Shown here: piece by piece, positions 20,379 through 64,000 of the stretch
How positions within the stretch are numbered: position 1 is the first letter of the stretch
Layout: each line of letters starts with the position of its first letter
Origin: Schmidtea polychroa
Taxonomy: Eukaryota
Direction: 5' to 3'
Assembly: GCA_044892525.1 (NCBI GenBank)
Contig: CM097885.1
Location: forward strand, 162,316,001-162,380,000
Length of the DNA: 64,000 nucleotides
Made by a program: the position numbers and the translations under genes
The notes under the pieces: generated by a model
What the model saw: only the letters and a program-made list of their open reading frames with translations
Told to the model about the DNA's origin: nothing
Database searches by the model: none

Positions 20379-20380
20379 GT

Positions 20381-35215: not shown

Positions 35216-35345
35216 TGTTTCGACCAGTCAGAGAGGGATTGCCTCTGACTGGCAGTTCGTTGCATGCCTTTTTTCTATCGCGTCTGTGTGCGCGGTCTGG
35301 TTAGACCGATTCTTGTTGGTGTGCGCATACAGACGCGAGCAATGG
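35216..35345 (+). promoter_or_regulatory. Palindromic leader cassette, copy A
   Basis: 10-bp hairpin CCAGTCAGAG/CTCTGACTGG (35224-35252); 16-bp arms 35278-35293 / 35323-35338; inner CGGTCT/AGACCG hairpin. Closely matches 58515-58641 (-). The regulatory role is inference. Confidence 0.6.
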
Positions 35346-35507
35346 ATTGATTTTGTAAATAGGTAATTTATTACTATTGTAAATTTTTATGGATTGATTT
35401 TTGTAAATAGAAATTAGATTGGATTTTTGGAAATGTTGTTTTACCGGATGAATTGGAATTTTTTGGAAGACATGTTGAATTGTTTTTAAATTGGATTTGT
35501 TGAAAGA

Positions 35508-37142
35508 ATGGCGGTCGAAATGAATTTGCGATGTGATCTAGGTTGTGATCAGAAATTCTGTCTTACATCTTTTCAAAATATTAACTTTGTGAAAGGCGAT
35601 CTCATTTATACTGATTTCCAAGGAAAAGTTCCCGATAAATTAATTGTATCGATTGTCACGGAACTTTCACAGTTGTTGCCATCAATTTTCATGATTATCC
35701 ATGGGATCAGGTCTTCTAAATTCACAGATAAGTTCGTCAATAAAAACAACGATATTGTATTATGTATTCGTAAGAAAATAATATTGAATCATTCTATATC
35801 GGATTTTTCAAATCGATTTGTTTGCAAAACGAAAATCAGAAATTATTTAATTGAAGAATTATCCAACAGATTTTCTCAGTTGTCCGAATTAAAACATTTG
35901 GGTAAGTCGAAGTTTGAAATCGCGCGTGTGCTTCGACGGAAACTGCTACTGGATAAAATGGCATATGACGATAAAATGATTGAGACGAGTTCAGCTACGA
36001 GATTGTTTAATATTACTGAAGTTTATCGTGCACAAATGGAAGCAGCTCGATAAAAATCTGACGTTGGAATGGACATGATCCCTGATTGTCGATCGCAAGT
36101 TTATCGTTCACAAATGGAAGCAGCTCAACTCTATTCCCAATCGGCTGAGAGGCGACCATTAGGATGTTCAATGATGGCATTATCTGATGATATGGAACTG
36201 AACAAATTGTTATTATTCAAAAATACAATTATTATTCGTGATCTTGAATTTAAACCCGAACATGGTAGCAGAGCGTGGTTCCGGCTAGCCAGCCAGAACA
36301 AGGTATTATATAGATTTTTTATGCATGATCTTGTTATTATATTAGCAATAGGTTATATGTGTTATATTTTTATTATATTTGATATTGTTGAAACATTTCC
36401 CCTATGGCCTGCCCTCCCTAACCCTATTAGAGGTGGATTGGCGCGGGTATTTGTACAAACATTAACAGGGGGGACAATTACTCTCGAAGTTGAATCTAGT
36501 GACACGATAGAAAATGTAAAAGCGAAAATACAAGATAAAGAAGGTAGTCCACCTGACCAGCAACGATTAATTTGCGCGGGGAAACAATTAGAAGATGGGC
36601 GAACATTATTTGATTATAATATTCAAAAGGAGTCTATTTTGCGTTTAGTTTTGCGATTGAGTGGTGGAATGCAAATATTCGTGAAGACACTGACAGGAAA
36701 AACAATAACTTTGGAAATAGAATCAAGTGATACTATTGAGAAGGTAAAGGCTAAAATTTAAGAAAAAGAAGGGATACCCCCAGGGCGACAAAGACTTAAT
36801 TTTGCCGGGAAAGTATTAAAAGATGGCCTAACGTTATTAGATTATAACGTTAGGAAAGAAGCCACGGTACATCTGGTTTTGGGTCTGGCAGGGGGAAGTC
36901 CAGTATCAGATGCTGAGTTCGAGGCAGGTTACAAGAGACGAACTGGGTGGAAGATTTCGTTAGGGCGTCTGCGTAACCGGGCTTTAGGAGATGGATCGGA
37001 CCCTAGGGAAGAACAAAGGAGAATGGAGGCATACGAAGATAAATATGAGGAAGTGATAAACGAATTTGAGGAGCTGAGGAATAATTCTCGGGAGTTAGGG
37101 CGGGAGAAAGAAGCAACAGGTAACATCACACAGTTTAAATGA
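35508..37142 (+). pseudogene. Chimeric intronless frame: unknown-PSMA6 fragments-hydrophobic segment-ubiquitin-ubiquitin-tail
   Basis: ORFs at 35508, 36069 and 36879 are in the same frame, broken only by TAA at 36051-53 and 36759-61. Contains [45 protein letters not shown] (PSMA6-like). Ub1 36441-36668 is 64/76 identical and Ub2 36669-36896 is 58/76 identical to canonical ubiquitin. Confidence 0.8.
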
Positions 37143-39284
37143 CATCATTGTAATGTTACAACAAAAACTGGCTCGAAATTTTATTAATAATAAAATTTCA
37201 ATTTTTATAATGGTGGTTTATCAGAAAAAGAATTTCATTTATTTAGCCATTTTAGAAATGGCTTTCAAGTAAGTTTTAAAATTTTAAGTAATTTTTAAGA
37301 GTTGAATTTTGATTTTTTATAGTTTTATATAGAATTATTTCAATTTAGATATAATTTGAATTATAATTAATGAAAGTAAATGCCAAAAATATGTAATCTT
37401 CCAAAACATTTCGGGAAAATTCGCTAAATATGAACAAAGTAATTTTTCAGATTTTTGTAACTTAATTTTAACTTTAAAATAAATTTTACGGTGATTTTTA
37501 TGTCATTTCATTACCACTTAACGTTGATTCTTCATAAATTGATTTCAAAAAATTTTCTGTGATCATTTTATTTTTCAAAATTTTCTGAAAAAGTTATTAT
37601 AGAAACTTGTCACAGCGGCGCATTTCTATATATCGAAAGTTTGCATATAATTTTTAGTATATGTTGTGTTTGTGTGCATTTATTTAATTTTTCTACTATG
37701 TTTTTTGATTTCTATAATGTAAAGCGTATCTCATTATACTATCAATGAGAACATCAGCGAGAAATCAAAGTAAGTTTGTATGTTTGTATAATATAAGTTT
37801 TAGATTTTTTTTGTATAATAAATGTTTCTCAGCCGGTTCTGATGTATGGCGTGGAGCAGTGCAATATAAAGAATAAGTCTAGGTGAAGGCTTTCCACCTT
37901 TCCGGTTTCAATATACTGAGAGGCGTCTAACAGACGTGGATAACGCAAGGTCAAAATAATATTAAATTAGTCGAGAAAAAGAGCCTGCAAGTGTAAAATA
38001 CTCAGTCAAATTAGAAAAAAATCTACAAAATGGTTTTTTTTGTGAAATTCTAAGATACTTGTTTGCATTTATAACTCTTTTGTCTGACAATTATTATTTT
38101 AATTTTATTATTAATATTTAATTAAATATATAATTTTATAATCAAATATAATCCCTACAAAAGACCTTTATGAAATATATTTTGATTTATTACAGGTAAA
38201 ATTATAAGCAAAAATAATCATGACAAAAAGCCATTTATATTTTGATTTTTAAATGATATTCATAGAAATAAACAATTAATTTTAGTAAACGGAAGTGAAT
38301 GTCCCAGGTAAAAAAATATTTTCTTTGATTATTTTTATTTTTTAAGATAATTATTATTTAATTCATTTTGTTTATATATTCTGATTTTTCAAAAAAGTAG
38401 GGTAAACCACCACAAATCTATGTTTATAATCATATATATAATCATATATTTATGACAAAAATTTGAGGTTGTCCTTGAGAATTCATTGATCAATTTTTTT
38501 ATAATTTTCAATTATCATATAAAAGTATTAGTAAAAATTAATAAAAAAGAATTGCGAAAGAGAATATACTAGACATGTGAAATGTCAAAGTAAAACCTTT
38601 GTTAAAATCAGGTTATTGTGGAAATCCTCGTAAATTGAATTTTTTATAGTTCAATCATAAATAATTTTAAAAAATTAGTTAGTAATGTAATAATTTGTTC
38701 AAACGGATAGTATAAAACAAAGTTTCTAAAAAACAAAGTTAATTTTATTTTTACACTGTATTTTAAGATATGTAGAATTATAAAAAATTTTCATACATAT
38801 TTATATTTAATAATTTAATATTTTTGTCTATTGAGTTATTTTTAAAGGTTTAAAGAATTCTACTTAACTGAGGCCATTATGCAATAAAGTAGAAAGATAT
38901 TTGGCCTCTGTATCCTACCATCGCCCTAATTTAATTATGTAATTAATCTGGATTATGCAATTACGTAATACTTGATTAAAAATTATGTCAATTTGAAGCA
39001 TGTTAATGTGAAGATGGTTACGTTAATCGGAAGTGTTGAATATTTCGTGCAAGTGTCCTTTTATTAAGAAAATCTAACACAATAATATTATCGAAATTAT
39101 CACAATTACACTTTTGTTACACATTTTAACGAAACAATCTCCGTTTACACAACTTTAAATAACTTTTTTACTGTGCACACTTCAATTTAAGCCAGAATCT
39201 TTTCACAGGGATTAAATTTCCAACGAGAAATGCAAAACAATGCATTATAAATTTCGAAAACAGATAGTAAATAATTATAGTAAT

Positions 39285-40100
39285 TCAACCAACAACCAGG
39301 TACTTACAAATAAATACCAACAAACACATAAAAACTAAACAAAGATACAGTACAAATTTTATTATTCATCACATATTTGCTTATAACAGGATCTTCTAAA
39401 TTCAGCTATTAGAATGTGAACTGGTTCAATTATATTTCCTTCTTGTAGTCTTTTTGCAGAATCGACATTGATAAGGGCATGGAATCTTTATTGGATCACT
39501 GCAAATCATACAGTCAATCAAACCCTTCAAACAAGATACTTTTTCTGATTCTTAATGCATAAAATCAATTTCTTCAATATTGATTCCTGCTATTAAATAC
39601 AACAACCAGTTACAAATAACCAAGTATTATTAACCAGATACCTAATACCAAGCACCAACAACTTAGTAACAACCTATATTCATTAAGTTATTTTTTAGTG
39701 TAGTTTATCAAATGTCTTTTTAAATCAATAAAATATTTAATTTGTGTTAGAATTGAAATATATTTTGAACTAAATCGCAATTGGTAGTTAGAATATTTTG
39801 TCTGATTAAGTAAAAAGTAGTCCAAATTTAACAACAGCATGATGATTTTTAAGCATTCGTCAAGGTAATTTTACAAATATGGTAAGTATTAAATGAAAAA
39901 AAAATTAAATAAGGCAATAATTGTCAACGCAACCTATTTAAAATAATACAGCACTAAATGGAAAGAAATATGAATGAAAGAAAGTTACAATCAAATACAT
40001 AAAATGCAAGTATAAAAAGCAATAAATTCTAAATTTTAATCACAAAAGATCTTTCTTCTTTGAATTGATTACTAATAACCAGATATTAACCTTTTTAAAA
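39285..40100 (-). repeat. Partial relative of the 25.6-28.5 kb foldback-like family
   Basis: ACAACCAG/TACCAAG arrays and inverted similarity to 27240-27620. Confidence 0.45.
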
Positions 40101-41193
40101 AAAACCTCAATTTCTTGTAATACATTTGATTTTTCGTCTAATTCTAATTATTCATTATCATAATCTAATTCTTTGTCAACAACTAAACTTTGCTAAATAA
40201 CCTACAACAATAATAGCTGACAATCATATATCCACTAAGATATCAAAGTTACATATGATATTTCCGAATTCTTTCATTATTTCTAGTATAATATTCTCAT
40301 GGAGATAACTGGATTGTTTCGCCCAGGAATTCTTTTTAAAAATTAGTAGTAAAGATTCATAATTCATAATAAAACTTTATAATCCATTTCCATAATCCAT
40401 TAATAACTATACCACTTATCTCAATGAAGATTTTTATCTTTTGAGTTTATTAATTTATTAATTTTTTAATAGATTAATCTATATTTCCCTGTTCAATGAA
40501 TAATTCACCTTCTATTTCCTCAATTCACTGAAGATTCTTACCTTCTGAGAATATGATTTTCATTATTAATTTTACCAAAATTTTCTTCATCATTTTCTTC
40601 TGTCTTTATTTCCTTGTTTAAAGAATAAATAATCTTTCATTTTATGCTACAATGATAATTTTTAGTACCCTAGAATAATTATTTTATCAAAGTTCTTATC
40701 TTTATTCATGATGATTTTGACTGGTTTAGATAATTTAAATGGAATTTAATGATAAATTACAGGAGATATCGTCAGTAATAACGAGTCTAATGTTGAGTGG
40801 TTATTGACGTATATTTAGGCGTCCAGGAGAATTAAGTTCGTTCATAATTATTTTTTAGTGTTGATGCTACATGATTTTAAAGAAATATTTAAGAAGAATT
40901 GTATGTTGATTGAAAGAATATTTAAAAAATATACGGTGAAAGGGTAGAATTCACGCTTACGTTAAAACGGAAAATTGCTAATAAACATTTAAATTAATAA
41001 ATTAAAGTAAGCTTAAAATATATATTATTACTTAATTAATAAATTAAACCAGCATTGAAATCAACATCAAAATTAAAAGAAAAGCATCGAAGATATTTGT
41101 TTAAATATTATGAAAAAAAGCGCAGTTTTGTGAATAGAATAAATTTTAGTTAAGTAAGTTATTGTATTTTGGTAATTTTATTAATTAATTTTA

Positions 41194-41830
41194 TTAATGG
41201 ATACCGAAAATGAATTTGATGTCGTTGCTGCTAACATACGGATTTAAAGGTGATCCTAAGATAAATTTAGTAGTAATTAATTTCTTGATAATTTGCAGTA
41301 TTTCAATAGATTCGACTTGATTTTCAATTTTATTTTGAAAAATTATTTTTAATGATATGTTCATAATTTGAGTTTTTACAATAATCAAGTGATATTAATA
41401 ACTTATTTAATTTTGATGATAGCAATGGCTTTGTTATGCTATTAAATTTTGATTGACTAAATGATTTAGACCTCTTATTACATGGATTTAGTTACTAAAT
41501 TATTTCAATGGTAGAATGTTGAATGTCGGTAACAGTTAGTTAAAGAAAATCTATATATTTTTGAAGAATATTAAGCATTTTCTATGGGTTTTAAGAGGAT
41601 TTAATCGACTGAATTATTATATTAAAGGGGGTTATACGATTTCAAGTGATGAAATTTTAGAAATCTTTAGGGAATTTAAAGGATATAATCGGTTGGATAT
41701 TATTGTTTAAAGAGGTAGAATTATGGTCATTTGGTGATGGATTGGTTGAATAATAAGGTTGGAATGTAACATCTTTAAAGTTGGTTGAATATCTATGTTT
41801 AAACGGATATTAATAATGTTTTTAAGGATT
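41194..41830 (-). pseudogene. Decayed leucine-rich-repeat (SDS22-like) sequence
   Basis: SN*IHVIRGLNHLVN and ENQVESIEILQIIKKL...LGSPL fit the LRR and LRR-cap pattern; many stops. Confidence 0.4.
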
Positions 41831-41880
41831 TCTTATTAGTAAAATATATGTTTTAAGGGAAATTACAATACCTCGGAGTA

Positions 41881-42129
41881 TCTCTCTACATATAAAAAAG
41901 CTAAGGGTTCCCTCCATCCGAATTTAACTTTTTTTATTTTATTTTTTTTATTTATTTATATTTTTATTATTTTTTTTAATTTCTTTAAATTATTTTTAAA
42001 TTTTATTATTTTTTTTAAAGTCCGCTTCGTTCCCTTCTTCAAACGTGATATGATTATCATTTTCCCGCTATTATTTCCAGTGTTCTAACGGGGTTGGTGA
42101 CGCGAAGCGAACAGGGGCGGAGTCCCTAG
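41881..42129 (+). mobile_element. Complete 249-bp non-autonomous Helitron
   Basis: A|TCTCTCTACATATAAAA start, GGGGC-GGA-GTCCC hairpin and CTAG|T end; inserted between A and T with no TSD. Confidence 0.85.
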
Positions 42130-43717
42130 TATATTAAATTTTTATAAATATTTTTTTTATATATTAAATGTTTAACCTATTATCCCTATAATGTTTCATT
42201 TAATAAGATTTGTATTATAAAAATTTATGATTTGAAATTAAAAAATTTTCCAACGTGAATTTGCTACGTTTTCTGAATTCTATATATTAACAAGATTTTT
42301 GTTTCAACCATTTGCTTATATTATCACATAATTAATAAAATATAAATTCATTTTGTATATTTCTTAAAACAAATATTCAAAAACAGCAGATAAAGGCAAA
42401 ACAAACAAAAAATGAAATTAATTCATTAATGCAAACATAAAAGTTTTGTTATGGGACATTACCCCAATATTTTTGTATAAATATTAAATCTAGTTTTTTT
42501 GCAACTATTATATGGATGTTTTAATTAATGTTATTATTTTGTTTAACTTAGAAATTCCGATTGCGTTGTAATTGTTAAGTAGTTTTTCTGAACCATTTTT
42601 GTGTCAGACAACATCTTAAATTAAATTCAAATATTAGAATCCTTTTAAAAAATTAATTTATATTTAAATGTTAACAATAGCTCCGAAAATAGGGGAGTAA
42701 TTAGATAATTATATTTCCTTTTCTCCTAGTTGACAAAAGATAAATGAATAGAATGCAGCCATGGATCTATTTTTATTTATTAATCTACTATCTATGATCT
42801 AATATTTATTAATCTATTATAAAATATTTAATTGGATAAGTAAAATTAAAAAAATACTAAAATTTGAAACAAAAAATTTTTAATGATATTCTATATATAT
42901 TTCTATATATATTTTTCAAGTTATACACATTCTATAATAGGTATAAATAAATTAAAAAACTGAAATATTATAAATATAAAAAACTAAACATTTTTATAAT
43001 TAAATTTAAAATAAGAAAAAATAAGTACAATATAAATTATTCGAAGCGTCCTTCAATATATTTCGACAGTCTTAATGTTATTATCGGATAGGATAGAATA
43101 AATTATATAAATAAATTATAAAATTATTATTTTTTTTAATTTTGTTTATTTATTTTTATTTTTATTTTAATTAACAAACTATAAATTTTAAATTATTTCA
43201 AACAAGGTTATTAAATCATTCAATATACTTGACAAAAACTAAAATCAATTTAACATCCAAACATTCACAACATTTTGCACATTTATTTTTAGATTAAACA
43301 TTTGATAATTTAATATATAATTAATTTTAAATTAATTAAAAATTATCATTTTTTATTACATTATTTACAAATTTTAATTAATTTCGTCTTTTGCACCCTT
43401 GAAAGAGCATGGCTACGACTCATAACCAAATTACCAAAACCGTAGACAAGACCTGTGCAATAAAGTCGATTAAAACTTCTCAACATATTCATTCTTTAGT
43501 ATTTGTTTTGCGAATTTCATCATAAATAAAATGAACAATTTAATGAATTAATCCATTAAAAATGTTTCCAAACAATGTACAAGATTTAAAATTTCCAGGC
43601 ATTCAAAATACAATAATATCACCACAAAATCCTCGAAATATATCATCTAATATTAATTTGATTGATTCAAAAATATTTACATTGCCATAAATAGAATGAC
43701 AGACAATTTAAATTTAA

Positions 43718-43931
43718 CCCTATAGCAGACTCATGAAGTTTTCCAACATGAGTAAGCGCGTCGGTCCCACATACCAATGTCGATTATAGGCACTCCTGAA
43801 ACTATATACCTTATTTCTTACCCAAATTACCATTAATTTGAAAGAAATGAGCATATTGAACAGGCAAAAAAAGCAAACAAACAACTTTTATATGGTGTCA
43901 ATCAGCGAGACCGCGCGTGAATGCTCTAGGG
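43718..43931. mobile_element. piggyBac-type MITE
   Basis: TTAA|CCCTATAGCA ... TGCTCTAGGG|TTAA. Confidence 0.8.
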
Positions 43932-45089
43932 TTAAATAATTCTATTGTCAAAGATTCCGGTTTAATTACAGTCACAACGAATTTTCTTGATTAACATTAC
44001 TTAAACATCATCAAATATTTTGAAAAATGAAACCGAATAAAATTAAAATTGATAGATTTAAACACCATACATAAAAGCGAAAAAATTATATTTTAGAATT
44101 TACATTATAATATCCTTTGTAATCAGGGGCGCACAAATTTTTTATGTGACGAGCCAAATTAAAATAAAAATATTTTACTGAGAACCACAAGCAAAAAAAT
44201 ATTTTTTATTGATTTTTATATACTACATATTAAATTTTACTTTTTAATAATTTTAGAAATATTTGGAACTAATTGTGTTGTAGCCAGCCTTACGTCTGTA
44301 ATACGAGATCGTAGCTTGCTTTTATTTTTATTCATAATTGTTCACATATATACGTTGAACCAAACAAAGATGGGTAACATCCCGCCGTATCATATAAATT
44401 TGGTTACTTGTCCTTATTCAAAAAAAGATTAATCTGTTATTTGTCCTTATTGATAAAATTTTTTTATGTCGCCGTCATTTAATTTTTGTTTGAATATTTC
44501 GCAGGATTGTAATTGTAGGCCAGGATTTATTGAAAAAGGATTCGAAAATACTTTAAAATAGAATTTATATTTTTTAAAATCCTAGAATCTTTTCTAAAAA
44601 ATTTCTAATAATTTTCCCATCTTTGTAGCATAAGGTCGATATATTTTATTTTAATATTTTATTTTGGGAAATGAAAACATTGACCATTTAAAAATTGGGT
44701 TTGGAATAATTTTAATTTAATTTAACTATAAAGTTTGAATGAATAAAAAAATAAATTTTGATTTATTTTTATTCCATCAATATTTAAAGTTTAAGAATTT
44801 TAGATTACTTCTCTTTAATAAGTAGATTAATTTTATTAATATTTCTTAATTTCTTTAATTTTATTCTTTTAGCGATTTGTTTATAATGAAATACATAAAT
44901 ATTACAATAATTTCAGGATTTAATAAAATGCCGTTTTTCGGAAAAATATTTTATTATAATCAGATTTTATAATAACCGATTTCCTTAAAATGGAATGTTT
45001 TATAGTATCCCAGTTTGATGTGAAACCCAAGTTATGGGTCTGGTCCACAAGTTCTAAGATCTAGTAAAAGCAGCTGATATCTGCTGATA

Positions 45090-46888
45090 AAAAAATGGTC
45101 TTAAATTTTCTTTTACTCTTGACGAATGGGTCGATGCTACGACTCGGAAACACCACGCTGATTCGGTCAGGTTGAGGTGTTTTGAAATTGGGATTTATGC
45201 GAATTATTGACCGTTGTACAGCAGAATTATTGTGTAAATCTGTTGAAAAACATTTGTTAGCTTTTGGTATCAATCCCACACACGATATTATGGCTGCAAC
45301 GGATGATGGGGCGTCTATTATTATCCTCTCATCTACCAAGTATGTTTAACCCATTACCACCCACTGTACTCACACGGGTAAACTTGTTAAAGGCGTAATT
45401 TCATGTTTTTCTATAATGATTATCATGGAACTAGTGACCCATTTCAACAATATATATCTAACTACTTTATTTATGTATTTTATTATATATATGAAACCGC
45501 TAGACCTCTTAGATTACATGTAGTTTTCTTTTGGACGTTAATGGGTTAAATCATGCATTTCCTCTAGGAGTCACTAAGACTTTTTACAAGAAAAAGGAAA
45601 AATTGTGCGATACCAATGAAACCATTGAAAATCAAACTGAAGTATTTGACGACAACTTTGATGATGATTTTGATTTGGATGATGGGGCCGATAAAGAAAT
45701 TTTTCTCTAAGAGAATTATGATGCGATTTTTGCTTTTGTGCTTAGAATTGTAATTTTGTTTCGGCGTTCTGATTGTTGCATAATAAAATACAAGAAATAA
45801 ACGCTGCCTTTGGCCTTACTAATGTCAATGCAAGAGAAATAGAAGATAAAACAAAAGCTACTTAATGAAAAAGTGAAGCTACAACTTGATGTCAAAACCA
45901 GGCGGAATACGATCGTTCATATGATCACAATTTTCATCCGATACTTTGACCCTATTAAAGTAGCATTAAGCGATCTTGGCGATGAAATGTTAAAAGAAAT
46001 CAACATAGAAATACTAAAATCTCTTGTCGACATCCTGACACTTGTTGAATTGGCAGTTTTGGCATTGGGAAAAAGAGTTGCATCAGTTTGTACGAGAAAA
46101 AAATATCTCAAAGCTCTTCCACTATAAGCGTAGAATTATTAGATAACATAAATGAATATATGGATAAAAAATGGACGAAACTCTTTTTGATCTCATCGAA
46201 TGCCTCGATACAGCTTCAGTCTTACAAACTTCTACTCTGAAGTATACATCAGAGTTAATGAAACGACTTTTTGTGACAGCTGAGACAACAAATGATGAAA
46301 ATGATACTGCAAATTCTCAAAGTGTCTCAGGTCAGAACGATGGACTTTTAAGTTTAGCACAAGAATTATCAAAACGCATAAATTCGTCTTCTATTCAAAC
46401 AATGACTTAGCCAAAATTTGATAAATCTACAGGAAATCGAACCGAGAATCTGGAGAAACTAGGCAATGTCCTTGACACAATTCAAATGATATCAATTGAA
46501 TATGAACAAACATTTTCAGTACCAGGAATTTTTCTTTCAAATTTGCGGTGCAAATTATCCGATAAGTCATTGGGTGCTCTAGTGTTCCTTAAATATTATT
46601 TCAAAAATCCAATTTTGTAACCTTATCGGCCATTTGGTGAAATTAAAAATGATTGAATAAAAAATAATCTCTAATTTGTAGTTAAAAAAAAACTTAAATA
46701 ATAATATTTTACAATTTGTTGCAATTATAACGTGAAAATTTAAAATTTTATGTTAAAAATATTTGGTCAAAAAATTTAAAAATTTTCGTACAAAGTCAGG
46801 CTTGAAAGCTTGACAAAAATGAGCAAGCTCGAGCCGAGCCGAGTCCAAGCCTCAAACACCAAGCTTTCCGAAACTCGAATCCGCACTA
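45090..46888 (+). pseudogene. Decayed hAT (Ac/BED-type) transposase with its 3' end
   Basis: FTLDEW, LGFMRI, DIMAATDDGAS, LQLDVKTR, dimerisation-domain relic; terminal ...CTCGAATCCGCACTA. Confidence 0.7.
45350..45545. mobile_element. piggyBac-type MITE nested in the hAT relic
   Basis: TTAA|CCCATTA ... TAATGGG|TTAA. Confidence 0.8.
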
Positions 46889-47530
46889 ACAGCTAATTCA
46901 ATTCTTGAAGGCCTTCAAATGGCAAATAAATTGGCAGATCATTTTTTAACTAATGATCATATAACCGAACGAGCTGCGAAATTTTAATCTGATCTGAAAT
47001 TTTGTATGGCTCGCTACAAGGAGCTGTAGTAAGAACTGTCCCGACTAGGAGCAGAACCAAATATTACCGAATTTGCTATTAAAATAAGTAACCCTGTGCT
47101 TGAAACTGTTTTTGATTGTAAGCTAACGCAGAAAAAGAGAAAGCGGCTACTATCTGAAACCGACTTCGAATAAAAAAAATTAACATTAAATACCATTTTT
47201 ATGTTCGTGAATATAAATGGGATTTTTTAAAAATTTTTTTAAATCTCTATTAAAAATGTAAAATCTATAATATATGTATATTAGATTAATAAAATATGTA
47301 TGGAGATAAATACAAAACTACAAAACTTGATTTTGATTCTTTAATTATTAATTTTTGTAGAAGATTTTATTTATGGAACCTATCTCATATTTTTGTACTA
47401 CTGTGTGTTTTTTTACTCGATTTTTTTACACGGTGGTCGGTGGAACGTATCTACCGTGTACTTGATCACATGGAGATACCAAAATTATATTGGAATGGTG
47501 GATTTAATCTTAGAGTAAGTCACTCTTGAG

Positions 47531-49010: not shown

Positions 49011-51829
49011 GTACTTTGAACATTTTAAATCAAAATTTTAATATTTAAAAACAAAATTTTATTCGCATATTATTAAATCAACAAACTTATAATAAACAAA
49101 TATTTTGCCATAACAAAGAAAATATGTAATTTTTTGACATTTCTATCCCTATAATCTTTTATTAAATTTTAAAAAAATTCACTTGAAAAAGGCAGTGCCG
49201 AAAATTCGTGAGTATTAACAAACATCGATATATTACTGATTTATAGTCTTCAAGCTCTCTTTTTATTAAATGATTTATCTTAAATTTTTATTATATTAAT
49301 TATTTACTTAATTATTCAATAGTTTTAACAATTTTATTAAGAACCGGAAAATGATATAATTTAAATAAAAAAAATAGGTAAGCCATGTGTAGAAACATTT
49401 TTTTCCTTTATCTGAATTAAATATTTTATTTTGTTTAAATGCTATAAAATTCTGTTACATTATTACGTTATATTATTGTCAATTTAATGACTTCAGAATT
49501 GAAATAATTGGAATAATATAAAATACTGACAAATTATTGCAATAATAACTAAAAATAACTTAAATATTTTTATGAGAAATTCGCTTTCAGTAATTGAGAT
49601 ATTTCAATTATGATAATATATGAGTCTGGCGTTATGAAATATGTGAGATTCTGGCCATAAATTTGTCTGATAGCAGATGATAGACATAAATAATAAACAA
49701 AACTGGAATAAAAAAAAATAATAAAAAGGATAAACATAATTTTGTTGATTCAACGAAATAAAAATATTAATTATAATTTTTTTCTAGTGTAAATAAATTT
49801 CAATTTTAAACCAATGAAATTTCATGAAATTTCAATTTATATTAGACAACATAATCCTTTCATCCAATTATTCCTTTTATAAACCAAAATAAAATATTAC
49901 TTTTATTAATAAATGCAATGAAAAATATTTGTTATTTTATCCCATATTTTTTCCATTAATCAAATATTTTTTATATTTTAAATTTCGCAAATATATATCG
50001 ATTCATACGAAAATTTATTTTTACAACTTTATTTTTAAAATTGTATTGAAAAATTCACAAATTTCATATGTCAATTTTTTAATAAATAAATTATGCCACC
50101 GATTTTCAAACTGGGATTTTAGAGTCATATGAAGGGGGTTGCTAAATAAAAATAAGGAAAGGATTTTCTGAGAAAAAATAAATATTATATTTAATATTAC
50201 ATTTGTTTTAAAACTACAGCCCAAAATAATATTTTTTTCAAGTGTTAGGCGAGTTCGAATTTTATTTAAAAGTTTGTAAATGCGCGGCTCTAAATTAGAA
50301 ATAGTTAAAAGCAAGTTATTATCAAGCGATATGAATCCATTTTTATACTGAGTTTTCAATATTAGTTTACTGAAAGGCCCTTTATTTCATTTATTTTTTT
50401 TATTTTCCTTTATTCACTTCGACCGGAAAGCCAAAACTTACCTAAATCCTGCAATGCAAACTGTAGTTGTAGTATTTTATCAACCAATAGTTCGTTGAGC
50501 TAATTGTTGGTATTTTTTGTAACGTTTCTATTACAGCAAAGTTTTTAAGAATGGATGAAATATTAATTTTTAATTATTTTTGACGTATTAGAAATCGTAG
50601 AGCTATAAATTTAAGATTTTTTGAAAAAAAAAATTTTTTTCCAGAACCTCAATGAGTTATTTAAATGGTAAAATGACCTCAATTGAAATACTTTGCTTCT
50701 ACTGTTTTTCATTATTCTAAGTTTATAAGCTCTAAATATTTTTAAAACCACATAAAATATAGTTCAATCGTAATTTATTTAATTAATTATTTCAGTTAAT
50801 TTGTAAAAAAAAATTAAAAATAACTTGAAAAACTCCAAAAGCTTCAGTGAGTGATATGAAATGTGCGAGACCCTAGGTGTCCCATTGCTAATTGGTGAAA
50901 CACCGCCTAAATCAGAGTGATTTTACAAACACACCAATCTCAAACTGTTTCCTATCCACATTTCTGAAAAGTAGTATCACCCAAGTAATTTCTATTATCA
51001 TAATAATTACAAAGATGAGAAAAGTTGGTACAAAAACACTTCAAACGGGATCTCTAATCTAGCCAGGAACTTGTTGTCGGCAGTTTTACTGCAACCAAGT
51101 GACTTGTTGATTGCGATCTTTCAAAAATCTCAATAAATGTTTTGTTTTAAATTATTTTAAATAAACTATATGTAAAGTATGTATTTATCTTAGTAACTGC
51201 TAAAAGACTCTTATTGTAATTAACTAGAGTTACTAGACAGTTTCTTGTTTGCATCTCAATATAATTATTTTAAATTTGCTAAATATTTGGTAACTTTATT
51301 GTCTATATTCCTATAATTTTATCATGTGGCCCGCCAACAAAAAATTAATTTCCATGAGTCCCGTGCACTAAAAAGGTTTCTTAATCCTGATTGAGACCTT
51401 TCATATTTTTAATTGGATATGCCTTTCCCATGAAATGAATTACAATTTCCATGAATTTGAGCTAGTTCAAAAACGACAATTATAAAAACGAAAAAAAAAT
51501 TCAGCTTATTAGTTGCTCAATTGTTTTTATTTATCCAAATTTTTATCAATTCATTTAAACAAACAAAGATAATTTTTATCATTATTGATTTTTATTCATA
51601 TTATTTCAAAATAAAAATTTGTAATAATAATAAAGGTAAAATTCCGAAATAAAAAACTTCTAAATGAATAATTTATAAGTTAGAGTATTTCGATTGAAAA
51701 GCAATATAATAGAAATAATCATATAATTTATTTATTTTTATTTATTTTAAATTCTTTTTTAAAATCAACTATATTTTAAGCATCATCTATAAATTTTGTA
51801 GGTTGTAAAGGCAATCTATTTATTGCAAT

Positions 51830-52110
51830 CATTGTATAGAAATTACCGAAGGATAAATTGGAACTTTTCGAATTTATATTGAGAAAAAAAAACCTTAAAG
51901 ACATGGAAAATATGGACAAAGTTCCAATGAGCTTTGATATGCTAACTAAAAACACGATCGAATGTTAATAATACGATTCAAATGTAGACTTACAGTAGTA
52001 TTGTCCCTTACGGAGAATGGAACCAAGTTAACCCCGGGGGCTATATTTAAATTGAAAATGATTTTGAAAGAGAGATTCCCACCACGAAAAAGAGATTGAA
52101 TGAATAAATC
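51830..52110 (+). pseudogene. pogo-type transposase fragment
   Basis: NMDKVPMSFDM matches the pogo NMDE.PM.FDM motif. Confidence 0.55.
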
Positions 52111-53115
52111 TAAATTTATTTAATAGATGAATGAGATTTTAAAAAGTGGCTTGGATCTTTTTTACCATTTGTATTCGATCCTACTGCAGTTCATTTGATG
52201 GAAATGTAAAAATAATTTAAGATTCTTGCTAACTGTTTGCTGTAATTGCTGGATGTTTTGCAAAATCTTTATACCTCTTGGACATTTTAAGTTGATATTT
52301 TGAAAGGATGTGAGAAGTGAATTCAAAAATGGAAACGACAATTATTCTACATTTACAAAAAGGATAAGATCCTAAGACAATCATCTACAGTCGCATGTGA
52401 ATGAATCGGGTCATCATTTAGTTTTACTAAGACCAAGTGCATGAATTAAGGTTTTCGAAGGATGAAAATTGCGAATGGAATCAGAAGGGACGAGGAAAAC
52501 AACGCATACTAAGAATCAACAGTCAATAAGGATGAATATGCAAATAACGTCCTTCGTTCATTCTTTTTGTAATCTGAAACTTATTGTATGTGATATTCTT
52601 ATTTTTACTATTTGATGACAAAATCATTAATGACACTTCAACATGATCTAGGTGTGTTATGAAATTTTTAATTTTTATCATGTAATTTTGAGATGATTAT
52701 TGCGAAAATTTATATTTCACATAATTACGTAAAGAACCTTTTTTTAATTAACATTGTAAGCATATTGAAATTAACAATTATCAATTAAAAATTTCATATA
52801 CATACAACCTAGATACACACTCACCACAATTGTCCCAATACAAATATTAAAGGAGTCTCTATTGGGGCCTACAAATTTCCATATTACATAGACTAACATT
52901 ATTAGCATAACACACATTATCAGCTTAGTCTCAACGAAGTTACAATATAACTGGTGTCAGGAGCAAAAATATACAAAACACACTCGCGAAAAATTCTTTT
53001 TCAACCCCTATCGCTTTCGGAATACCTAATATAGAAGTATAAAGAATAGTGGCACTATAACAAAAAGTGAGTTCATACGCAATAACATCGGTTCTTTGGG
53101 ATTCCGTCTTCCAAA

Positions 53116-53420
53116 ATGTCACAAAGCTGTTCTTCGTTTGGTCATGAACTACTGTGCGACCTCAAATGTGATTTGAAGAATAAAATTGCAAATTTAAAAT
53201 CGGAAGAACGTAAGTTTAGCTTGAGCATAGATGAGTCGACAAGCGTTCGAAACCGACGTTACATGAACGTTCATATCTATTATCACGACGGAGAATCTGA
53301 CAACCTTGGGCGTGTGCGAATTCAGGGATCATGTCCCTTAGAAAAAGTATATGAGCTCTTAGATGCAAAGCTTTCAGACTTCAATTTGAACCTCCAGTCG
53401 GACATCGTCTCAAATTCGGG
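53116..53420 (+). pseudogene. hAT transposase fragment
   Basis: KFSLSIDESTSVRNRRYMNV...NLGRVRI...FNLNLQSDIV. Confidence 0.7.
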
Positions 53421-54600
53421 AAACTATCACCAGCGCATCAACAGTTATGCTACAATCACGACATACACTTGGCAGTTATGGAGATAATGTATCAAAAACG
53501 ACTACACGTAATCTAAGAGGTCTAGCGGTTTCATCTATATAATAAAATACATAAATAAAGTAGTGAGATGGTGAAAATAATAATGATTCATGAGCACATT
53601 GATCAGCAAATTCGATGAAGTAATAATCGAAAACAAAAAAATTAAACGTGAACTCACCGAAATGAAAGAAAAATTCCAAATGCAAAACTACAATTGTTCA
53701 CCAAACCGTTATAACAGACTCGGTCAGATTCACGAAACCGAAAAAACAAAGCCTCTTACAACAACACAGACAAAACTAAAGATGAGATTTGTTACTAACA
53801 CCAAAAGTTCGGGAACAAAGCATACAAATGCAACAACCCATGCAACTACAAAACACAGGAAAACTGATGAAGTCGCCTTTAATCGTACCGACATTTGGCG
53901 ACAAAAATAAAACGTGCAATCACAAACAATAATTTCCTGATTGACACAGGTTCAGTCATCTCCCTATTACCCCACCAAATGTTCAAAAAACACAAAACAA
54001 CAAATAACAAACTCACCGCAGCCAAAGGTACCAACATAAGTACATTCGGACAACATACTACGACGATAACAATCAACAACAAAGAGTACACCTGGTCGTT
54101 CACTATAGCCGAGGTACAACAACCAATAATCGGTGCTGATTTCTAATCACACTCTAACTTACTAGTAGACTGCAGAAATAAAGACTTAGTCGAAAACCCC
54201 ATCACAAAAACAAAAACAAAACTATCAACAACAAATGACTACCCACAAATTGAGATTGGAGTAATCCAAACAAACCCAACCAATAAAAACAAAGCAACCA
54301 TCACGGTCCCGAAATAACTCGATTAATAAAACATTTCAACAAACTGACCAAACCAGTAACACTCAAAAAGAATTCGGACAACCCAACCGAACACTCAATC
54401 ATAACATTGGCAACCCAGTACACTCTAAAGTTAGACAACTGGACCCACAAAAAACAGAAATCACTAAACCAATTTTCAAAGAATTACACGACAACAAAAT
54501 AGTAAGACATTCAAACTCAGAATGATCTTCCGCACTTAAGAAAACGAGTCTGGTAAAAAACCAATCGAGTTTTTTTCAAAAGTTTCAGATCACACTCAGA
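53420..54600 (+). pseudogene. Decayed Gypsy gag-protease-RT fragment
   Basis: FLIDTGSVISLLP...PIIGADF (aspartic protease), followed by an RT N-terminal relic. Confidence 0.75.
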
Positions 54601-55210
54601 TCATCGCCAAATAGCAAAAATAAGAATATCACATACAGTACACTTACGATGCAATGATATAATAAAACCTTAAAGTTTTACCTGCTGGGTATATATTATC
54701 CCAGGGGTGGCCAACCCAAATCAATCGAAGGGCCAAATTTTCGGAAAAAAAATAATTATCCTAAACTTTAGGTTGATATTATTTATATTAATATTGATAA
54801 ATTGTTGTTTAAATGATGTGGGAAAGTTCGTATTAATTTTGGTTTTTGTGTTTCTTTAGTAAGGTTCCCAAAGTGTGGACAGTGATCTCAACTAAGACCA
54901 ATGACAAGATTTTTTTTGATTTGATAAAAGTAGATGTCGGATATTAGAAAAATAGAAAAAGTATTTAAATTAAATAAATATTAAAAGAATAGCCGAAAAT
55001 AAATACCGCATCAATTTGTGTGTAAAGATTTTAATCAATATATTTTTTCTTTCTTTCCTGGTTGATATTGTTGGAGATGTCTACGATTTGAGTTACTGAT
55101 TGAGAAAATTTCTGAGCATCATGGAAGTCACTTATTAATAGTTATTGATTTTTACTATATTAATATATGATATAATTTTTTATTGATTTTCTTTAATACT
55201 TCTATTGGTA

Positions 55211-55568
55211 CTTCCGTGTAATCTTACCCCCAAAAATTAAATTATAAAATACAATTAAAATAACAATATAAAAATGAGAGAATACATTATTGATGACGTT
55301 ATTGAACATTATTGAACATGAATTTATTAAGGCTATCTGTGATTTATGTGACTATGTGAGTTTATGTGACGCAAACGTGTTCTAAGCAACAGTGCCGATG
55401 TGTTCGACACTATTCTCAACGACATTGTGGTTTTCTGGCCACCTGGATGACCATTTACAAACTCTTTACAAACATTTGCTGAGTTTGTAACTGTGATTTA
55501 GAAAATAAATATAATAATTATATGTGTTCTTTTTTAATTTAATTTTTGGGGGTAAGATAACACGGAAG
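55211..55568. mobile_element. Tc1/mariner-type MITE
   Basis: ~34-bp TIR CTTCCGTGT(A/T)ATCTTACCCCCAAAAATTAAATTA with TA TSD. Confidence 0.9.
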
Positions 55569-56259
55569 TACCCTTCTATTAAAGAGCTCAGAACAAATAT
55601 TTTAAAATTTGAGGTCACAGACAAAAATAGTTTAGGACATCAAAAATAATTTCTAAATAGAATTTTTAAGTCGATAAATAAAGAAAAATTAGTTTAAAAA
55701 TTTATTTTCAAAGAAATTATATTTTCATAAATCTAAAAGAATTTAAACTCAAATGAGAATTTTAATTACATTAATGAAATTACATTTATTCAAACAAAGA
55801 TTTGTTGTCAATATTAATAATGCAAATATTTCTTTATTTTCATCATTTAGCAATAGCAGCTTCCAAAATTTATTAATTATGTCGTTTTTTGATTTATTAA
55901 ATTTAATTTCAATATTCTGATTATATTTTTGTTGCACAATATTTAATGAAAATTTGGAAAAAATTTCATATATGTAAAAATGAACTAAAATTAATATTAC
56001 CCACTTGTGGGAAATATTTTTAAAATATTTCTTAAAATTATTTTAAAATTAATTAATTTAAATAATGAGATTATAAACTATGCAGACTCTAAAATCAAAC
56101 TGATTTTTATTAAAATGTTAACTGTTAATGTTCATAAGTGTCATTTTTGTATGATGTTGCTTACATGCATCATGATGAAAAGTTCACAACATTTTACATA
56201 TTTAGAACATCCTATTCTAATTATTTTGCAAATACGGTTTACTGCATGAAATTAATTAA

Positions 56260-56515
56260 CCCGTTCACGTCGGCGCGGATCATCAGTAGCCCGTGCTAAC
56301 CCGTCCCATCGAGCGGTGCGTACCACCAGTGGGACGTTTTGATTGTGTTATTAGACGTATATTAGACGTATTATTAGAAAATTTAACGTAAATTCATCAA
56401 AAACATTTATTTTTAATTACAATTATAATTAATAACGTATTATAAACATAACTTTTGTTAAATAACAAAACTGGGCCGCCAGATGATGCGCAGTATGAAA
56501 ACCGGCGTGAACCTA
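56260..56515. mobile_element. piggyBac-type MITE
   Basis: TTAA|CCCGTTCACGTCGG ... CCGGCGTGAAC(cta)|TTAA. Confidence 0.7.
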
Positions 56516-56906
56516 TTAAGGACACAAGAACGAGCTTTCAAAAAATAAATCAGTTAACATACTACAATTGTAAAAAATCAAATTTAATTTTTAATTAAAT
56601 TTTGTTCGATATCAGAAACAGGACCATATCCAGGGAGTGGCGAATAAAGTAATCGCTTTAGGCGCGGAAGCGAGAGAAAATCCATAAGGGCGCCAAAATG
56701 ATGTCATCATTTTGAGAAAACTTGCTCACCAAATAGTTATAAAAGCTTAAATTATAAATATGAACTCCCAGGCATGAGTGTTTCTACTATTTCTTCGTAA
56801 CTTTGACTTATTCAATCGTGATTTTTATTTTGTTTTCTCTATTATCTGATGTTCTTTTGTATATTAGTCACCACCACACCATCACAACCAATAAAACACC
56901 AAAAGA

Positions 56907-56961
<55 letters not shown>

Positions 56962-57684
56962 AAAGACTTTGTAAAGTAATTAGCATATTTTAGGAAAATC
57001 AATGATTTTAATTTGTTGATTTTTATATTTTTGTTAGAATGTGGCATTTTGTCTATCTGATTTGGTTTTTAGATAATTATGAAATTTTAATAAATATTTA
57101 TGGAATATTTCTTTTATTGAAATTAATTTAATTGTATGTCAAGAAGCACGAATTTAGAAGCAGAAATTATTGAATATATTAAGAACACATGTAGAGAAGA
57201 ACATGTTAAGAAGTCCTTAGTGCAATTCAAATTGGTGATTTTTTCTATTTGACACATTTTTCTATTATTTGAAAGAAAGGAAGTAAAATAAATAATAAAA
57301 AACAAAGCAAAAGTAAAGAAATTAGAAATTCTGGGAAATATAAGAAATCGTTGAGTGAATTATTTAAAAGCGATTGCGAAAAAATTGAATATTAATTTGA
57401 TTTCTTCAGTGATTCTATAAAAATTTTAAAAAATTTAATGAGAAAATATATCTAATTTTAATTTATTTTAAAGTAATATTTTAGTCAGAAAATTCTGTTT
57501 TATTTCATATATTCCAAAATGATGCTCTTAATTTAATACATTTTTATTAAAAATAATAAATTTGATTCCATTAAAACAATTTGTAATATTTATCTTTTAA
57601 TCTTATTTGAAAAGGAATGACATTTATATGAATTATAATATTTACCTTAAATTAAACAGGTAAAATAAACAAAATATAGCGAAT

Positions 57685-58326
57685 TCAAATGACATTATCA
57701 ATATTTCTGAAATTAATAAATAATAATAATAATAATTGAATAAGTCCAAGAACAATTTTATTTTCCGCCTCTACAGGGCCGCGTGGATCAGTTTTGAATA
57801 ATAACATTTTGTCCAGTTCAATATCATAAGATAATGCCATCATTGAACATCCTAATGGTCGCCTCTCAGCCGATTGGGAATAGAGTTGATGGATATCCGC
57901 CATAGAAGAACATATTATATCACAAGTCATTTTATGTCCAATTTCAGAATTAAATCGAGCTGCTTCCATTTATGCACGATAAACTTGAGATCGACAATCA
58001 GGGATCATACCAATCATAACACCTCCAGTACTTTCAGTAATATTAAACAATCTCGTAGCTGAACTCGTCTCAATCATTTTATCGGGAACTTTTCCTTTTG
58101 CATATCTATCGATTTCATTAAGCCAATTTTTAACATTGTTAAACGAATCTTGATCGGTAACATCAACCACAACAATAATTCCATGAGCTCCTCTGGAATA
58201 ATACGAGGTTATAGTTCCAAATCTTGCTTGATATGCAGTATCCCATATTCGCAATGTCATTGTATCACAATTTTCAGCATAATAGTCATCTGCGGATTTG
58301 ACGAAATAGTCCCAATCTGGATTCAT
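57685..58326 (-). pseudogene. Chimeric intronless frame: internally deleted Rab1 fused to a PSMA6 fragment
   Basis: 58326-58099 [60 protein letters not shown] is Rab1-like. It continues in frame as [55 protein letters not shown] (PSMA6-like). Single TAA at 57970-72. Confidence 0.85.
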
Positions 58327-58514
58327 TTAATTATTTCCAACCTCCGGTTTCAAAACAAAAAGTTCCAGAATTCAATTTAAAAAACCTTCCAAATCTCGCA
58401 GTTTAAACAACTCCAAAAAATCAAATCTAATTTAATAATCTACAAAATTAATACCAAAAATCAATACCAATCAAAAACTACAATGCAAAACCAACTTACA
58501 ATCTCAATCGAATT

Positions 58515-58641
58515 TCCATTGCTCGCGTCTGTGTGCGCACACCAACAATATTCGGTCTAACCAGACCGCGCACACAGACGCGATATAAAAAAGCCAAACA
58601 ACTGCCAGTCAGAGGCAATCCCCCTCTGACTGGTCGAAACA
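58515..58641 (-). promoter_or_regulatory. Palindromic leader cassette, copy B
   Basis: Perfect 16-bp arms 58523-58538 / 58568-58583 and 11-bp hairpin 58605-58633; homologous to copy A. The regulatory role is inference. Confidence 0.6.
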
Positions 58642-63761: not shown

Positions 63762-63799
<38 letters not shown>

Positions 63800-63942: not shown

Positions 63943-64000
63943 AGAGGTAGGACAATAATTGATTAGGTTTTTTGTGATTGTTGTAATTTTTAGATTTTTT

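What the first reader, a model, noticed from the sequence alone, without database searches (positions are those of the whole stretch)
35216..58641. Family of palindrome-headed loci carrying in-frame mosaics of housekeeping-gene fragments (candidate gene-capture or protein-shuffling system)
Seen: the same ~125-bp multi-hairpin cassette heads locus A (35216, +) and locus B (58641, -), and its palindromic arms recur at 63820. About 160-190 bp of T/G-rich sequence separates each cassette from an ATG that opens an intronless mosaic. Both mosaics share a near-identical PSMA6-derived block (GATAAAATGATTGAGACGAGTTCAGCTACGAGATTGTTTAATATTACTGAA) but carry different passengers: Rab1 in B; an unknown 336-nt insert, two ubiquitins and a tail in A. 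I count roughly ten module junctions and all keep the frame. Established: PSMA6, Rab1 and polyubiquitin are abundant housekeeping mRNAs, and Pack-MULEs, Helitrons and RT template switching are known to capture host fragments. Inference: this is a mobile or amplifying cassette that accretes mRNA pieces, with frame conservation implying past selection on translation. It lacks TSDs, Helitron TC/CTAG ends, LTRs and a poly(A) tail, so it fits no class I can name.
Basis: partly seen in the sequence, partly recalled or inferred. Interest (0 to 1): 0.9.

Follow-up and report, generated by a model that had tools for sequence, protein, structure and literature searches.

The report
Hairpin-headed chimeric housekeeping-gene pseudogenes
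Two inverted copies of a strange chimeric gene in an AT-rich, probably planarian, genome stitch pieces of proteasome, Rab1 and ubiquitin genes into one reading frame behind a shared hairpin-forming head; the pattern is real, but nothing here shows a mobile gene-capture system.

Summary
The sequence facts hold. A 130-bp GC-rich double-hairpin cassette heads locus A (35216, +) and locus B (58641, -) at about 92-94% identity. Its 16-nt palindrome arms recur twice at 63820-63945. A C-depleted G/T-rich leader (161 and 185 nt) leads to an ATG.

Each ORF is one frame built of sense-oriented pieces. B carries a Rab1 core plus PSMA6 residues about 57-155. A carries PSMA6 blocks, a 336-nt insert, a 216-nt unknown piece, two ubiquitins and an 82-codon tail. 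I could test eight junctions and all keep the frame (chance about 1.5e-4).

The shared blocks differ mostly at non-synonymous sites, and every module has lost its parent's key motifs.

Only these two copies plus one partial palindrome locus exist in the window. I found no TIR, TSD, LTR, poly(A) or common 3' end, and no relative in any searchable collection.

Best reading (about 0.4): decaying chimeric retro-pseudogenes, made by RNA-level template switching among abundant mRNAs, filtered for translatability, then duplicated locally in inverted orientation. Mobility is unproven.

The parts
35216..35346 (+). Cassette A. Hairpin 1 has a 10-bp stem and hairpin 2 has 16-nt arms with an inner 5-bp hairpin, followed by GAGCAATGG.
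35347..35507 (+). Leader A. It is G/T-rich (67%) with 2% C, holds short repeated ATTGG/TTTTGG motifs, and is homologous to leader B but about 25% diverged with indels.
35508..37142 (+). Mosaic ORF A, 545 codons in a single frame. It is broken by 2 in-frame stops and has no frameshift.
35640..35975 (+). The 336-nt in-frame insert inside the PSMA6-derived part of A. It is flanked by a 6-7-nt direct repeat, has no stop in frame, and has no detectable relative.
35970..36224 (+). PSMA6-derived blocks of A. They are shared with B at 88-100% nt identity. Relative to B they show one forward jump, one backward jump (a short duplication) and one 23-codon deletion, all in frame.
36225..36440 (+). Unidentified 72-codon module of A. 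It is open in frame, and its last residues resemble the C-terminal end of a ubiquitin unit.
36441..36668 (+). Ubiquitin unit 1, with 11 of 75 residues different from canonical ubiquitin.
36669..36896 (+). Ubiquitin unit 2, directly abutting unit 1. It has 17 residue differences from canonical ubiquitin, and the C-terminal RGG context is altered.
36897..37142 (+). Tail of 82 codons including the stop. It is purine- and G-rich (46% GC against about 27% locally) and has no significant relative.
58512..58641 (-). Cassette B, with an 11-bp hairpin 1 and perfect 16-nt arms in hairpin 2.
58327..58511 (-). Leader B, 70% G+T and 4% C.
57685..58326 (-). Mosaic ORF B, 214 codons in a single frame. It is broken by 1 in-frame stop and has no frameshift.
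58096..58326 (-). Rab1-derived module of B. It has a Rab1-like N-terminus, two in-frame internal deletions that remove the P-loop and switch I, and then a core matching Rab1 residues about 54-122 (80% identity) with the DTAGQ motif altered.
57784..58095 (-). PSMA6-derived module of B, contiguous with PSMA6 residues about 57-155.
63820..63945 (+). Locus C. It holds one perfect 26-nt palindrome and one split copy of the same arms, each followed by GAGCAA and C-poor G/T-rich sequence. Hairpin 1 is absent, and the window ends 55 nt later.

Best explanation
A and B are two diverged, inverted copies of one lineage-specific chimeric unit. The unit is a GC-rich double-hairpin head, a C-poor G/T-rich leader, and an ORF assembled from sense-oriented pieces of abundant housekeeping mRNAs. 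Both copies carry a PSMA6 core. B adds Rab1. A adds polyubiquitin and three pieces of unknown origin.

I think the ORFs arose at the RNA level (inferred). A reverse transcriptase, of which this genome has many sources, switched templates forwards, backwards and between mRNAs. The cDNA products came to lie behind the hairpin head, which acts as promoter or 5' UTR.

Only RNAs that stayed translatable persisted (inferred, for example through nonsense-mediated decay or a preference of reverse transcriptase for translated RNA). That filter would explain why every junction keeps the frame although the proteins have lost their parental functions.

The unit was then copied locally in inverted orientation (shown: a pair 23.4 kb apart). 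It is now decaying (shown: 3 in-frame stops in total, mostly non-synonymous differences, key motifs lost). I find no evidence that it is a defined transposon.
For: -
- There is a single open frame: 2 and 1 internal stops, against a mean of 40.5 per 545 codons in the window. Every unidentified module has 0 in-frame stops against 1-11 in the other frames.
- All 8 testable junctions are in frame and all recognisable modules are in sense orientation.
- Within PSMA6, A differs from B by a forward jump, a backward jump with a short duplication, and a deletion, with 1-5 nt of microhomology read from the sequence. This is the pattern expected of copy-choice.
- The Rab1 piece is continuous across a site where the Macrostomum Rab1 gene has an intron.
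- Decay is visible. Shared blocks show 9 non-synonymous against 1 synonymous difference. Ubiquitin units differ from canonical ubiquitin at 11 and 17 residues, and Ub1 against Ub2 gives pN 0.18. Rab1 has lost its P-loop and its DTAGQ motif.
- The window contains an LTR retrotransposon with RT, RNase H and integrase domains, so reverse transcriptase is at hand.
- No transposon hallmarks were found.
Against: - There is no poly(A) remnant or target-site duplication, so retro-insertion is not shown directly.
- The parental planarian genes could not be fetched. Intron loss therefore rests on one site in a distant flatworm.
- The origin of the hairpin head is unknown, and it matches no RNA family.
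- A and B differ by whole modules although their shared parts are only about 6% diverged. That fits a larger recombining family better than a simple local duplication.
- Three of A's modules have no identifiable parent.
- The translatability filter is an inference with no expression data behind it.
Confidence: 0.4

Rival explanations
1. This is a non-autonomous mobile element. The hairpin cassette is its terminus or its 5' UTR and packaging structure. Each round of copying adds or shuffles host mRNA pieces, and A, B and C are separate insertions from a larger dispersed family.
For: - A and B share head, leader and PSMA6 core but carry different modules at the same positions. The N-terminal modules are unrelated, the insert is in A only, and the 3' halves are unrelated, all at only about 6% divergence in the shared parts.
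- The flanks outside the cassettes are unrelated.
- Hairpin stems are better conserved than linkers, 2 changes in 64 stem nt against 6 changes plus a 4-nt indel in 67 non-stem nt.
- Palindrome arms recur at a third site.
Against: - Only 2 full copies exist in 64 kb, and they form an inverted pair.
- There is no common 3' end, TIR, TSD, LTR or poly(A).
- No transposase, Rep or RT is linked to the unit.
- No copy was found in the viral or metagenome collections or in the protein databases.
- With two copies, a sharp 5' edge is not evidence of a terminus.
Confidence: 0.2
2. The history is purely DNA-level. One chimeric pseudogene formed by illegitimate recombination or exon shuffling. An inverted segmental duplication then made A and B, and ordinary deletions and insertions followed. 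The in-frame pattern comes partly from chance and partly from only recognising pieces that lie in frame.
For: - The pair is inverted within a TE-rich region.
- Junctions show microhomology, which replication slippage or end joining also produces.
- The loci are pseudogene-like now.
- Sequence downstream of A is paralogous to sequence upstream of C, so segmental duplication has acted here.
Against: - Eight of eight testable junctions are in frame (about 1.5e-4).
- There are no frameshifts in 759 codons, despite 14-22% amino-acid divergence of the ubiquitin units.
- Every unknown module is open only in the sense frame.
- B lacks the Rab1 intron seen in Macrostomum.
Confidence: 0.2
3. This is a living, fast-evolving, lineage-specific gene family. 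Its chimeric proteins are made, and the stops are strain polymorphisms, assembly errors or sites of read-through.
For: - The frames are extremely open for this genome.
- The 5' module and leader composition are conserved.
- All three internal stops are the same codon.
- The excess of non-synonymous change could reflect diversifying selection.
Against: - Both copies carry stops.
- The functional motifs of every parent protein are lost.
- No homologous protein exists among 5.8 billion clusters or 1.84 billion representatives.
- The single-sequence structure prediction is disordered, mean pLDDT 33.
Confidence: 0.1
4. These are endogenised copies of a recombinant or defective RNA replicon, virus-like in nature, whose polyprotein frame had taken up host mRNA pieces. 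Polyubiquitin is the classical passenger of such events.
For: - The layout is a structured 5' end, then a leader of skewed composition (very little C), then a single long frame.
- Host pieces, including ubiquitin repeats, are inserted in frame.
- Deletions and back-jumps resemble copy-choice.
- The tail has a G-rich, foreign-looking composition.
Against: - No viral domain is present in either ORF.
- There are no hits in the viral contigs.
- The cargo appears entirely host-like or unknown.
Confidence: 0.05

Closest known systems
Chimeric retrogenes made by reverse-transcriptase template switching (LINE-mediated small-RNA/mRNA chimeras; established knowledge, not tested by name here)
   Same: Both are intron-free, sense-oriented joins of pieces from several abundant RNAs, with a small structured sequence at the 5' end and microhomology at junctions.
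   Different: The known cases end in poly(A), have target-site duplications, and show no bias toward in-frame junctions. Here there is no poly(A) and no TSD, and 8 of 8 junctions are in frame.
Gene-fragment capture by DNA transposons (Pack-MULEs, GingerRoot, Helitrons; PMC6839031 for GingerRoot and Pack-MULEs)
   Same: Both are mosaics of fragments from several host genes inside a repeated unit that sits in TE-rich DNA.
   Different: Those elements have TIRs with TSDs, or TC...CTRR ends. They capture genomic DNA in either orientation. None of these features is present here.
Host-gene transduction by LTR retroelements (maize Bs1; retroviral oncogene capture; my own knowledge)
   Same: Both fuse several spliced host gene pieces in frame.
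   Different: Transduction requires flanking LTRs and a gag fusion. No LTRs flank A or B.
In-frame host ubiquitin insertions in RNA virus polyproteins (pestivirus type; my own knowledge)
   Same: Both involve copy-choice capture of polyubiquitin mRNA that must stay in frame.
   Different: Those are RNA genomes with a replicase. Here the sequence is chromosomal DNA without any viral gene.
Inverted segmental duplication
   Same: Both give two copies in opposite orientation tens of kb apart, with a single homology boundary.
   Different: Duplication does not explain the module-level differences between the copies or the in-frame mosaic itself.

Membership tests
Helitron / Helentron | 5' TC and 3' CTRR termini with a subterminal 3' hairpin | tested here: not met
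   The unit begins TGTTTCGACC. Read on the other strand, hairpin 1 lies 8 nt from the homology edge, but the end is ...GAAACA, not CTRR.
Helitron / Helentron | Rep/helicase protein in autonomous copies; insertion into an AT or TT site without TSD | not testable with these tools
   Pfam hits among the window ORFs I scanned show no Rep or helicase. No empty site is available to compare.
TIR DNA transposon carrying gene fragments (Pack-MULE type) | Terminal inverted repeats at both ends of each unit | tested here: not met
   The first 17 nt occur once per locus only, and the covariance model finds no further copy. The A and B cassettes are inverted relative to each other across 23.4 kb, but see the next row.
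TIR DNA transposon carrying gene fragments (Pack-MULE type) | Target-site duplication | tested here: not met
   No direct repeat was found for A. The outer flanks of the 35216-58641 segment do not match. The only candidate for B is an 11-nt ATT microsatellite match.
LTR retroelement with transduced host genes | Flanking long terminal direct repeats | tested here: not met
   No direct repeat brackets A or B. The only LTR pair in the window is at 19035-23855.
Processed or chimeric retrocopy (LINE-mediated) | Absence of parental introns | tested here: inconclusive
   B is continuous across the site of one intron of the Macrostomum lignano Rab1 gene. The parental genes of the source species could not be fetched.
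Processed or chimeric retrocopy (LINE-mediated) | 3' poly(A) tract and TSD | tested here: not met
   No A-run of 7 or more lies within about 870 nt downstream of ORF A, and none within the 1.9 kb examined downstream of B. There is no TSD.
Known structured RNA families (snRNA, SL RNA, ribozymes, miRNA) | Match to an Rfam covariance model | tested here: not met
   Nothing reaches gathering score in the cassettes. At E up to 10 there are only chance miRNA-like hits of 12-22 bits.
Functional Rab1 GTPase | P-loop, switch I and DTAGQ motifs | tested here: not met
   The PDB alignment covers only residues about 54-122. The P-loop and switch I are absent and DTAGQ is altered.
20S proteasome subunit alpha-6 | Complete alpha-subunit domain with N-terminal alpha signature | tested here: not met
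   Only Pfam Proteasome profile positions 21-139 are matched in B. A has shuffled sub-blocks of these.
Polyubiquitin gene | Head-to-tail 76-residue units with near-invariant sequence | tested here: inconclusive
   The head-to-tail arrangement is met (36441-36896). Sequence invariance is not met, with 11 and 17 differences and one unit broken by a stop.
RNA virus with captured host sequence | Viral replicase or capsid genes in the same frame or locus | tested here: not met
   Neither ORF holds a viral Pfam domain. There are no relatives in IMG/VR.

The most novel reading that the evidence does not exclude
The loci are snapshots of an RNA-based selfish lineage. Its copying depends on being translated, so it accretes and reshuffles pieces of abundant host mRNAs strictly in frame behind a conserved hairpin head. 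That would be a gene-shuffling vehicle with none of the hallmarks of the known transposon classes.
Probability: 0.12. Interest if true: 0.85.

Novelty: new variant of a known kind. Interest (0 to 1): 0.45.

Why it matters
Suppose the frame-keeping is a property of the process and not of a few lucky events. These loci would then show a route by which pieces of unrelated genes are joined into translatable chimeras, which bears on how new genes and domain combinations arise.

If instead this is a single decaying chimeric pseudogene that was duplicated once, it is an oddity of a TE-rich planarian region with little wider meaning.

A genome-wide count of the cassette would separate the two readings cheaply.

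Tried and rejected
**Structured RNA**
- I tested whether the cassette is a known structured RNA (snRNA, spliced-leader RNA, hammerhead or HDV-like ribozyme, miRNA). Rfam found nothing, at gathering score or at E up to 10, on either strand.
- No GU donor lies at a spliced-leader-like distance. The planarian SL3 paper could not be read.

**Transposon or viral termini**
- A parvovirus-like or Helitron-like terminal hairpin was considered. The unit has no second terminus and no Rep gene.
- TIR, TSD, LTR and poly(A) searches were all negative.

**Unexplained modules of A**
- The N-terminus of A is not diverged Rab1. A Rab1 HMM built from 91 fetched proteins gives no score.
- It could not be confirmed as PSMA6 N-terminus either. 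Pfam finds nothing, and only the GKVPDK stretch is shared with B.
- The 336-nt insert has no relative by word search. phmmer against 1.84 billion representatives gave only a spurious tandem-repeat ORF. Pfam, PDB and six-frame comparison with the window also found nothing.
- The AlphaFold model has pLDDT 33, so no fold search was run.
- The tail gave only a sub-threshold DUF7801 hit.

**Searches for more copies**
- Exact look-ups of three window proteins in the assembly collection found nothing.
- Palindrome and hairpin patterns gave no hits in IMG/VR or in JGI metagenomes.
- Sequence strings gave no hits in the literature.

**Other ideas**
- I considered an alternative genetic code, because all three stops are the same codon. 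I rejected it because this is a metazoan nuclear region with long TE ORFs that are open under the standard code.

Full report
**Context**

The window is AT-rich (20-34% GC per 2 kb) and full of microsatellites and transposon remains. The only Rfam family at gathering score is mir-753 at 62788-62849 (75 bits). I know this family from planarians, so the source is probably a Schmidtea-like flatworm. That attribution is an inference.

The window also holds an LTR retrotransposon at 19035-23855 with gag, protease, RT/RNase H and integrase domains. There are also two hAT-like remnants. Two runs of N, at 61332-61474 and 62379-62653, were left untouched.

**The observation**

The cassette is real.
- A (35216-35346, +) and B (58641-58512, -) differ by 8 substitutions and one 4-nt indel.
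- Both fold into two strong hairpins, far better than shuffled controls.
- The 15-nt arm occurs eight times in the window against 0.01 expected. Four of those lie at 63820-63938, where one copy is a perfect 26-nt palindrome and one is split by a different loop.
- A covariance model built from A and B, run with filters off, finds only these three places.

Homology between A and B continues through a leader to the ATG. The leader is 161 nt in A and 185 nt in B. It is 67-70% G+T and only 2-4% C. The A leader lies in the most C-poor 1% of 161-nt windows. The sequence after the C palindromes has the same composition.

**The mosaics**

Each locus is one reading frame.

In B (57685-58326, -):
- A Rab1-like N-terminus is followed by two in-frame internal deletions that remove the P-loop and switch I.
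- Next comes a Rab1 core, with PDB Rab1A at 1.7e-24 and 80% identity to Rab1 proteins from plants to flatworms.
- A contiguous PSMA6 stretch follows, residues about 57-155 (PDB 3e-10).

In A (35508-37142, +):
- The N-terminal module is unexplained. It shares only the GKVPDK stretch with B.
- A 336-nt insert is bounded by a short direct repeat.
- The PSMA6 blocks that follow are 88-100% identical to B's but rearranged. They show a forward jump, a backward jump that duplicates a short stretch, and a 23-codon deletion.
- Then come a 216-nt unknown piece, two abutting ubiquitin units, and an 82-codon G-rich tail with no relatives.

**Frame**

I could test eight junctions, meaning that the native frame is known on both sides or the inserted length can be measured. 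There are three in B and five in A, and all are in frame, which has a chance of about 1.5e-4 if they are independent.

Frames of 545 codons in this window carry 40.5 stops on average and never fewer than 3. Only locus A and the hAT-like ORF come close to being open. Each unidentified module has no in-frame stop, against 1-11 in its other five frames. So the unknown pieces are also coding sequence read in the right frame.

**Decay**

A has two in-frame stops and B has one, and neither has a frameshift.

Between A and B the shared coding blocks differ at about 6% of sites, with 9 non-synonymous and 1 synonymous difference. The protein has therefore not been under purifying selection since the copies split.

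The two ubiquitin units differ from canonical ubiquitin at 11 and 17 residues. They are saturated at synonymous sites relative to each other (pS 0.81, pN 0.18). This is what a captured polyubiquitin gene would look like after long relaxed evolution.

No parental function can survive in any module. The number of stops is about what neutral change would give for this divergence. The absence of frameshifts, and the fact that all larger rearrangements are in frame, is not expected under neutral change. That is my estimate from usual indel rates, not a computed test.

**Mobility**

I found no support for mobility.
- A and B are inverted with the cassettes outermost, 23.4 kb apart.
- The flanks outside are unrelated, but with two copies that only marks one homology boundary.
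- Homology ends after the PSMA6 core, and the 3' parts are unrelated.
- There is no TIR within a unit, no LTR, no poly(A) and no convincing target-site duplication.
- Sequence just downstream of A (37240-37830) is paralogous to sequence upstream of C (62737-63745). It includes a decayed copy of the mir-753 locus, so segmental duplication has shaped this region.

Outside the window I could find nothing.
- Protein word searches, a full phmmer scan, exact-protein look-ups, pattern scans of IMG/VR and JGI metagenomes, and literature string searches were all empty or spurious.
- The tools hold no eukaryotic genome that can be searched by DNA.

**RNA or DNA origin**

All recognisable pieces are in sense orientation. 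The rearrangements within PSMA6 look like copy-choice, with 1-5 nt of microhomology.

The Macrostomum lignano Rab1 gene has an intron inside the stretch that B carries without interruption. This is one site in a distant relative, so intron loss is suggested but not shown.

**Best explanation (about 0.4)**

These are chimeric retro-derived ORFs made by template switching among abundant mRNAs. They were kept open for a time by a filter on translatability, sit behind a hairpin-forming promoter or 5' UTR module, were duplicated locally in inverted orientation, and are now decaying.
- Shown: the anatomy, the frame statistics, the decay and the inverted pair.
- Inferred: the RNA step, the filter and the role of the cassette.

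**Rivals**
- A defined non-autonomous mobile element (0.2). It is favoured by the module-level differences between copies whose shared parts are only about 6% apart.
- A purely DNA-level history (0.2).
- A living fast-evolving gene family (0.1).
- An endogenised recombinant RNA replicon (0.05).

**Comparison with known systems**

The loci work most like template-switch chimeric retrogenes, or like gene-fragment-carrying transposons. They fail the defining tests of Helitrons, TIR elements, LTR transduction and LINE retrocopies, as listed in the membership table.

What is unusual is the combination of strict frame-keeping, loss of all parental function, and a conserved palindromic head. I rate it a new variant of a known kind, with moderate interest. 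A simple census could raise or lower that sharply.

In some searches my scripts printed translations of the two ORFs in which the stops appear as asterisks. I did this before I had decided whether the loci should be handled as a virus-like element. I built or saved no repaired, joined or consensus sequence. This report gives only counts of the breaks.

Noticed in passing
19035-23855: A Ty3/gypsy-type LTR retrotransposon with 327-nt LTRs that are 98.5% identical. It has gag zinc-knuckle, aspartic protease, RT/RNase H and integrase domains. The pol region is split over several ORFs in different frames, so it has at least two frameshifts despite the young-looking LTRs.
   Followed up: partly
62788-62849 (+): A clear mir-753 precursor (75 bits, gathering score 62; hairpin -29.5 kcal/mol, z -8.9). 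It is the best clue that the source is a planarian.
   Followed up: partly
37240-37830 and 62737-63745: Sequence downstream of mosaic A is paralogous to sequence upstream of locus C. It includes a decayed copy of the mir-753 locus (5' arm 84% identical, hairpin lost) and a block of about 190 nt that ends in a conserved AG/GTAAGTTTGT donor-like motif.
   Followed up: partly
32671-34158 (-), end near 34370-34420: A 495-codon open ORF with weak hAT-type hits (DUF4371, Spin-doc zinc finger), about 1 kb upstream of cassette A. A GC-rich palindromic stretch lies about 200-260 nt beyond the start of that ORF, and I took it for the element's terminus without testing.
   Followed up: no
45456-45540 and 53485-53569: 85-nt inverted repeats (88-96%) bracket about 8 kb that holds a BED zinc-finger ORF and other short ORFs. 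This is probably a decayed hAT-like transposon lying between loci A and B.
   Followed up: no
7757-7828, 14709-14804, 49173-49268, 58845-58959: A MITE-like palindromic repeat family (86-95% identity). One copy sits about 200 nt upstream of cassette B.
   Followed up: no
36400-37142: The 3' half of mosaic A is G-rich, with GC skew +0.25 to +0.39 and a tail of 46% GC in a 25-30% GC region. One C-rich patch lies just before ubiquitin unit 1. This could reflect a foreign source or strand-biased hypermutation, and I did not test it.
   Followed up: no
58642-58652 and 63766-63799: ATT microsatellite runs lie directly 5' of cassette B and about 20 nt 5' of locus C. They are absent 5' of cassette A. 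This may be chance in a genome rich in such repeats.
   Followed up: no
26800-28400: A G/T-rich array of degenerate units of about 14 nt (GTTAGTACTTGGTA-like) with strong GC skew (+0.3).
   Followed up: no
61332-61474 and 62379-62653: Two runs of N (143 and 275 nt), left as they are.
   Followed up: no
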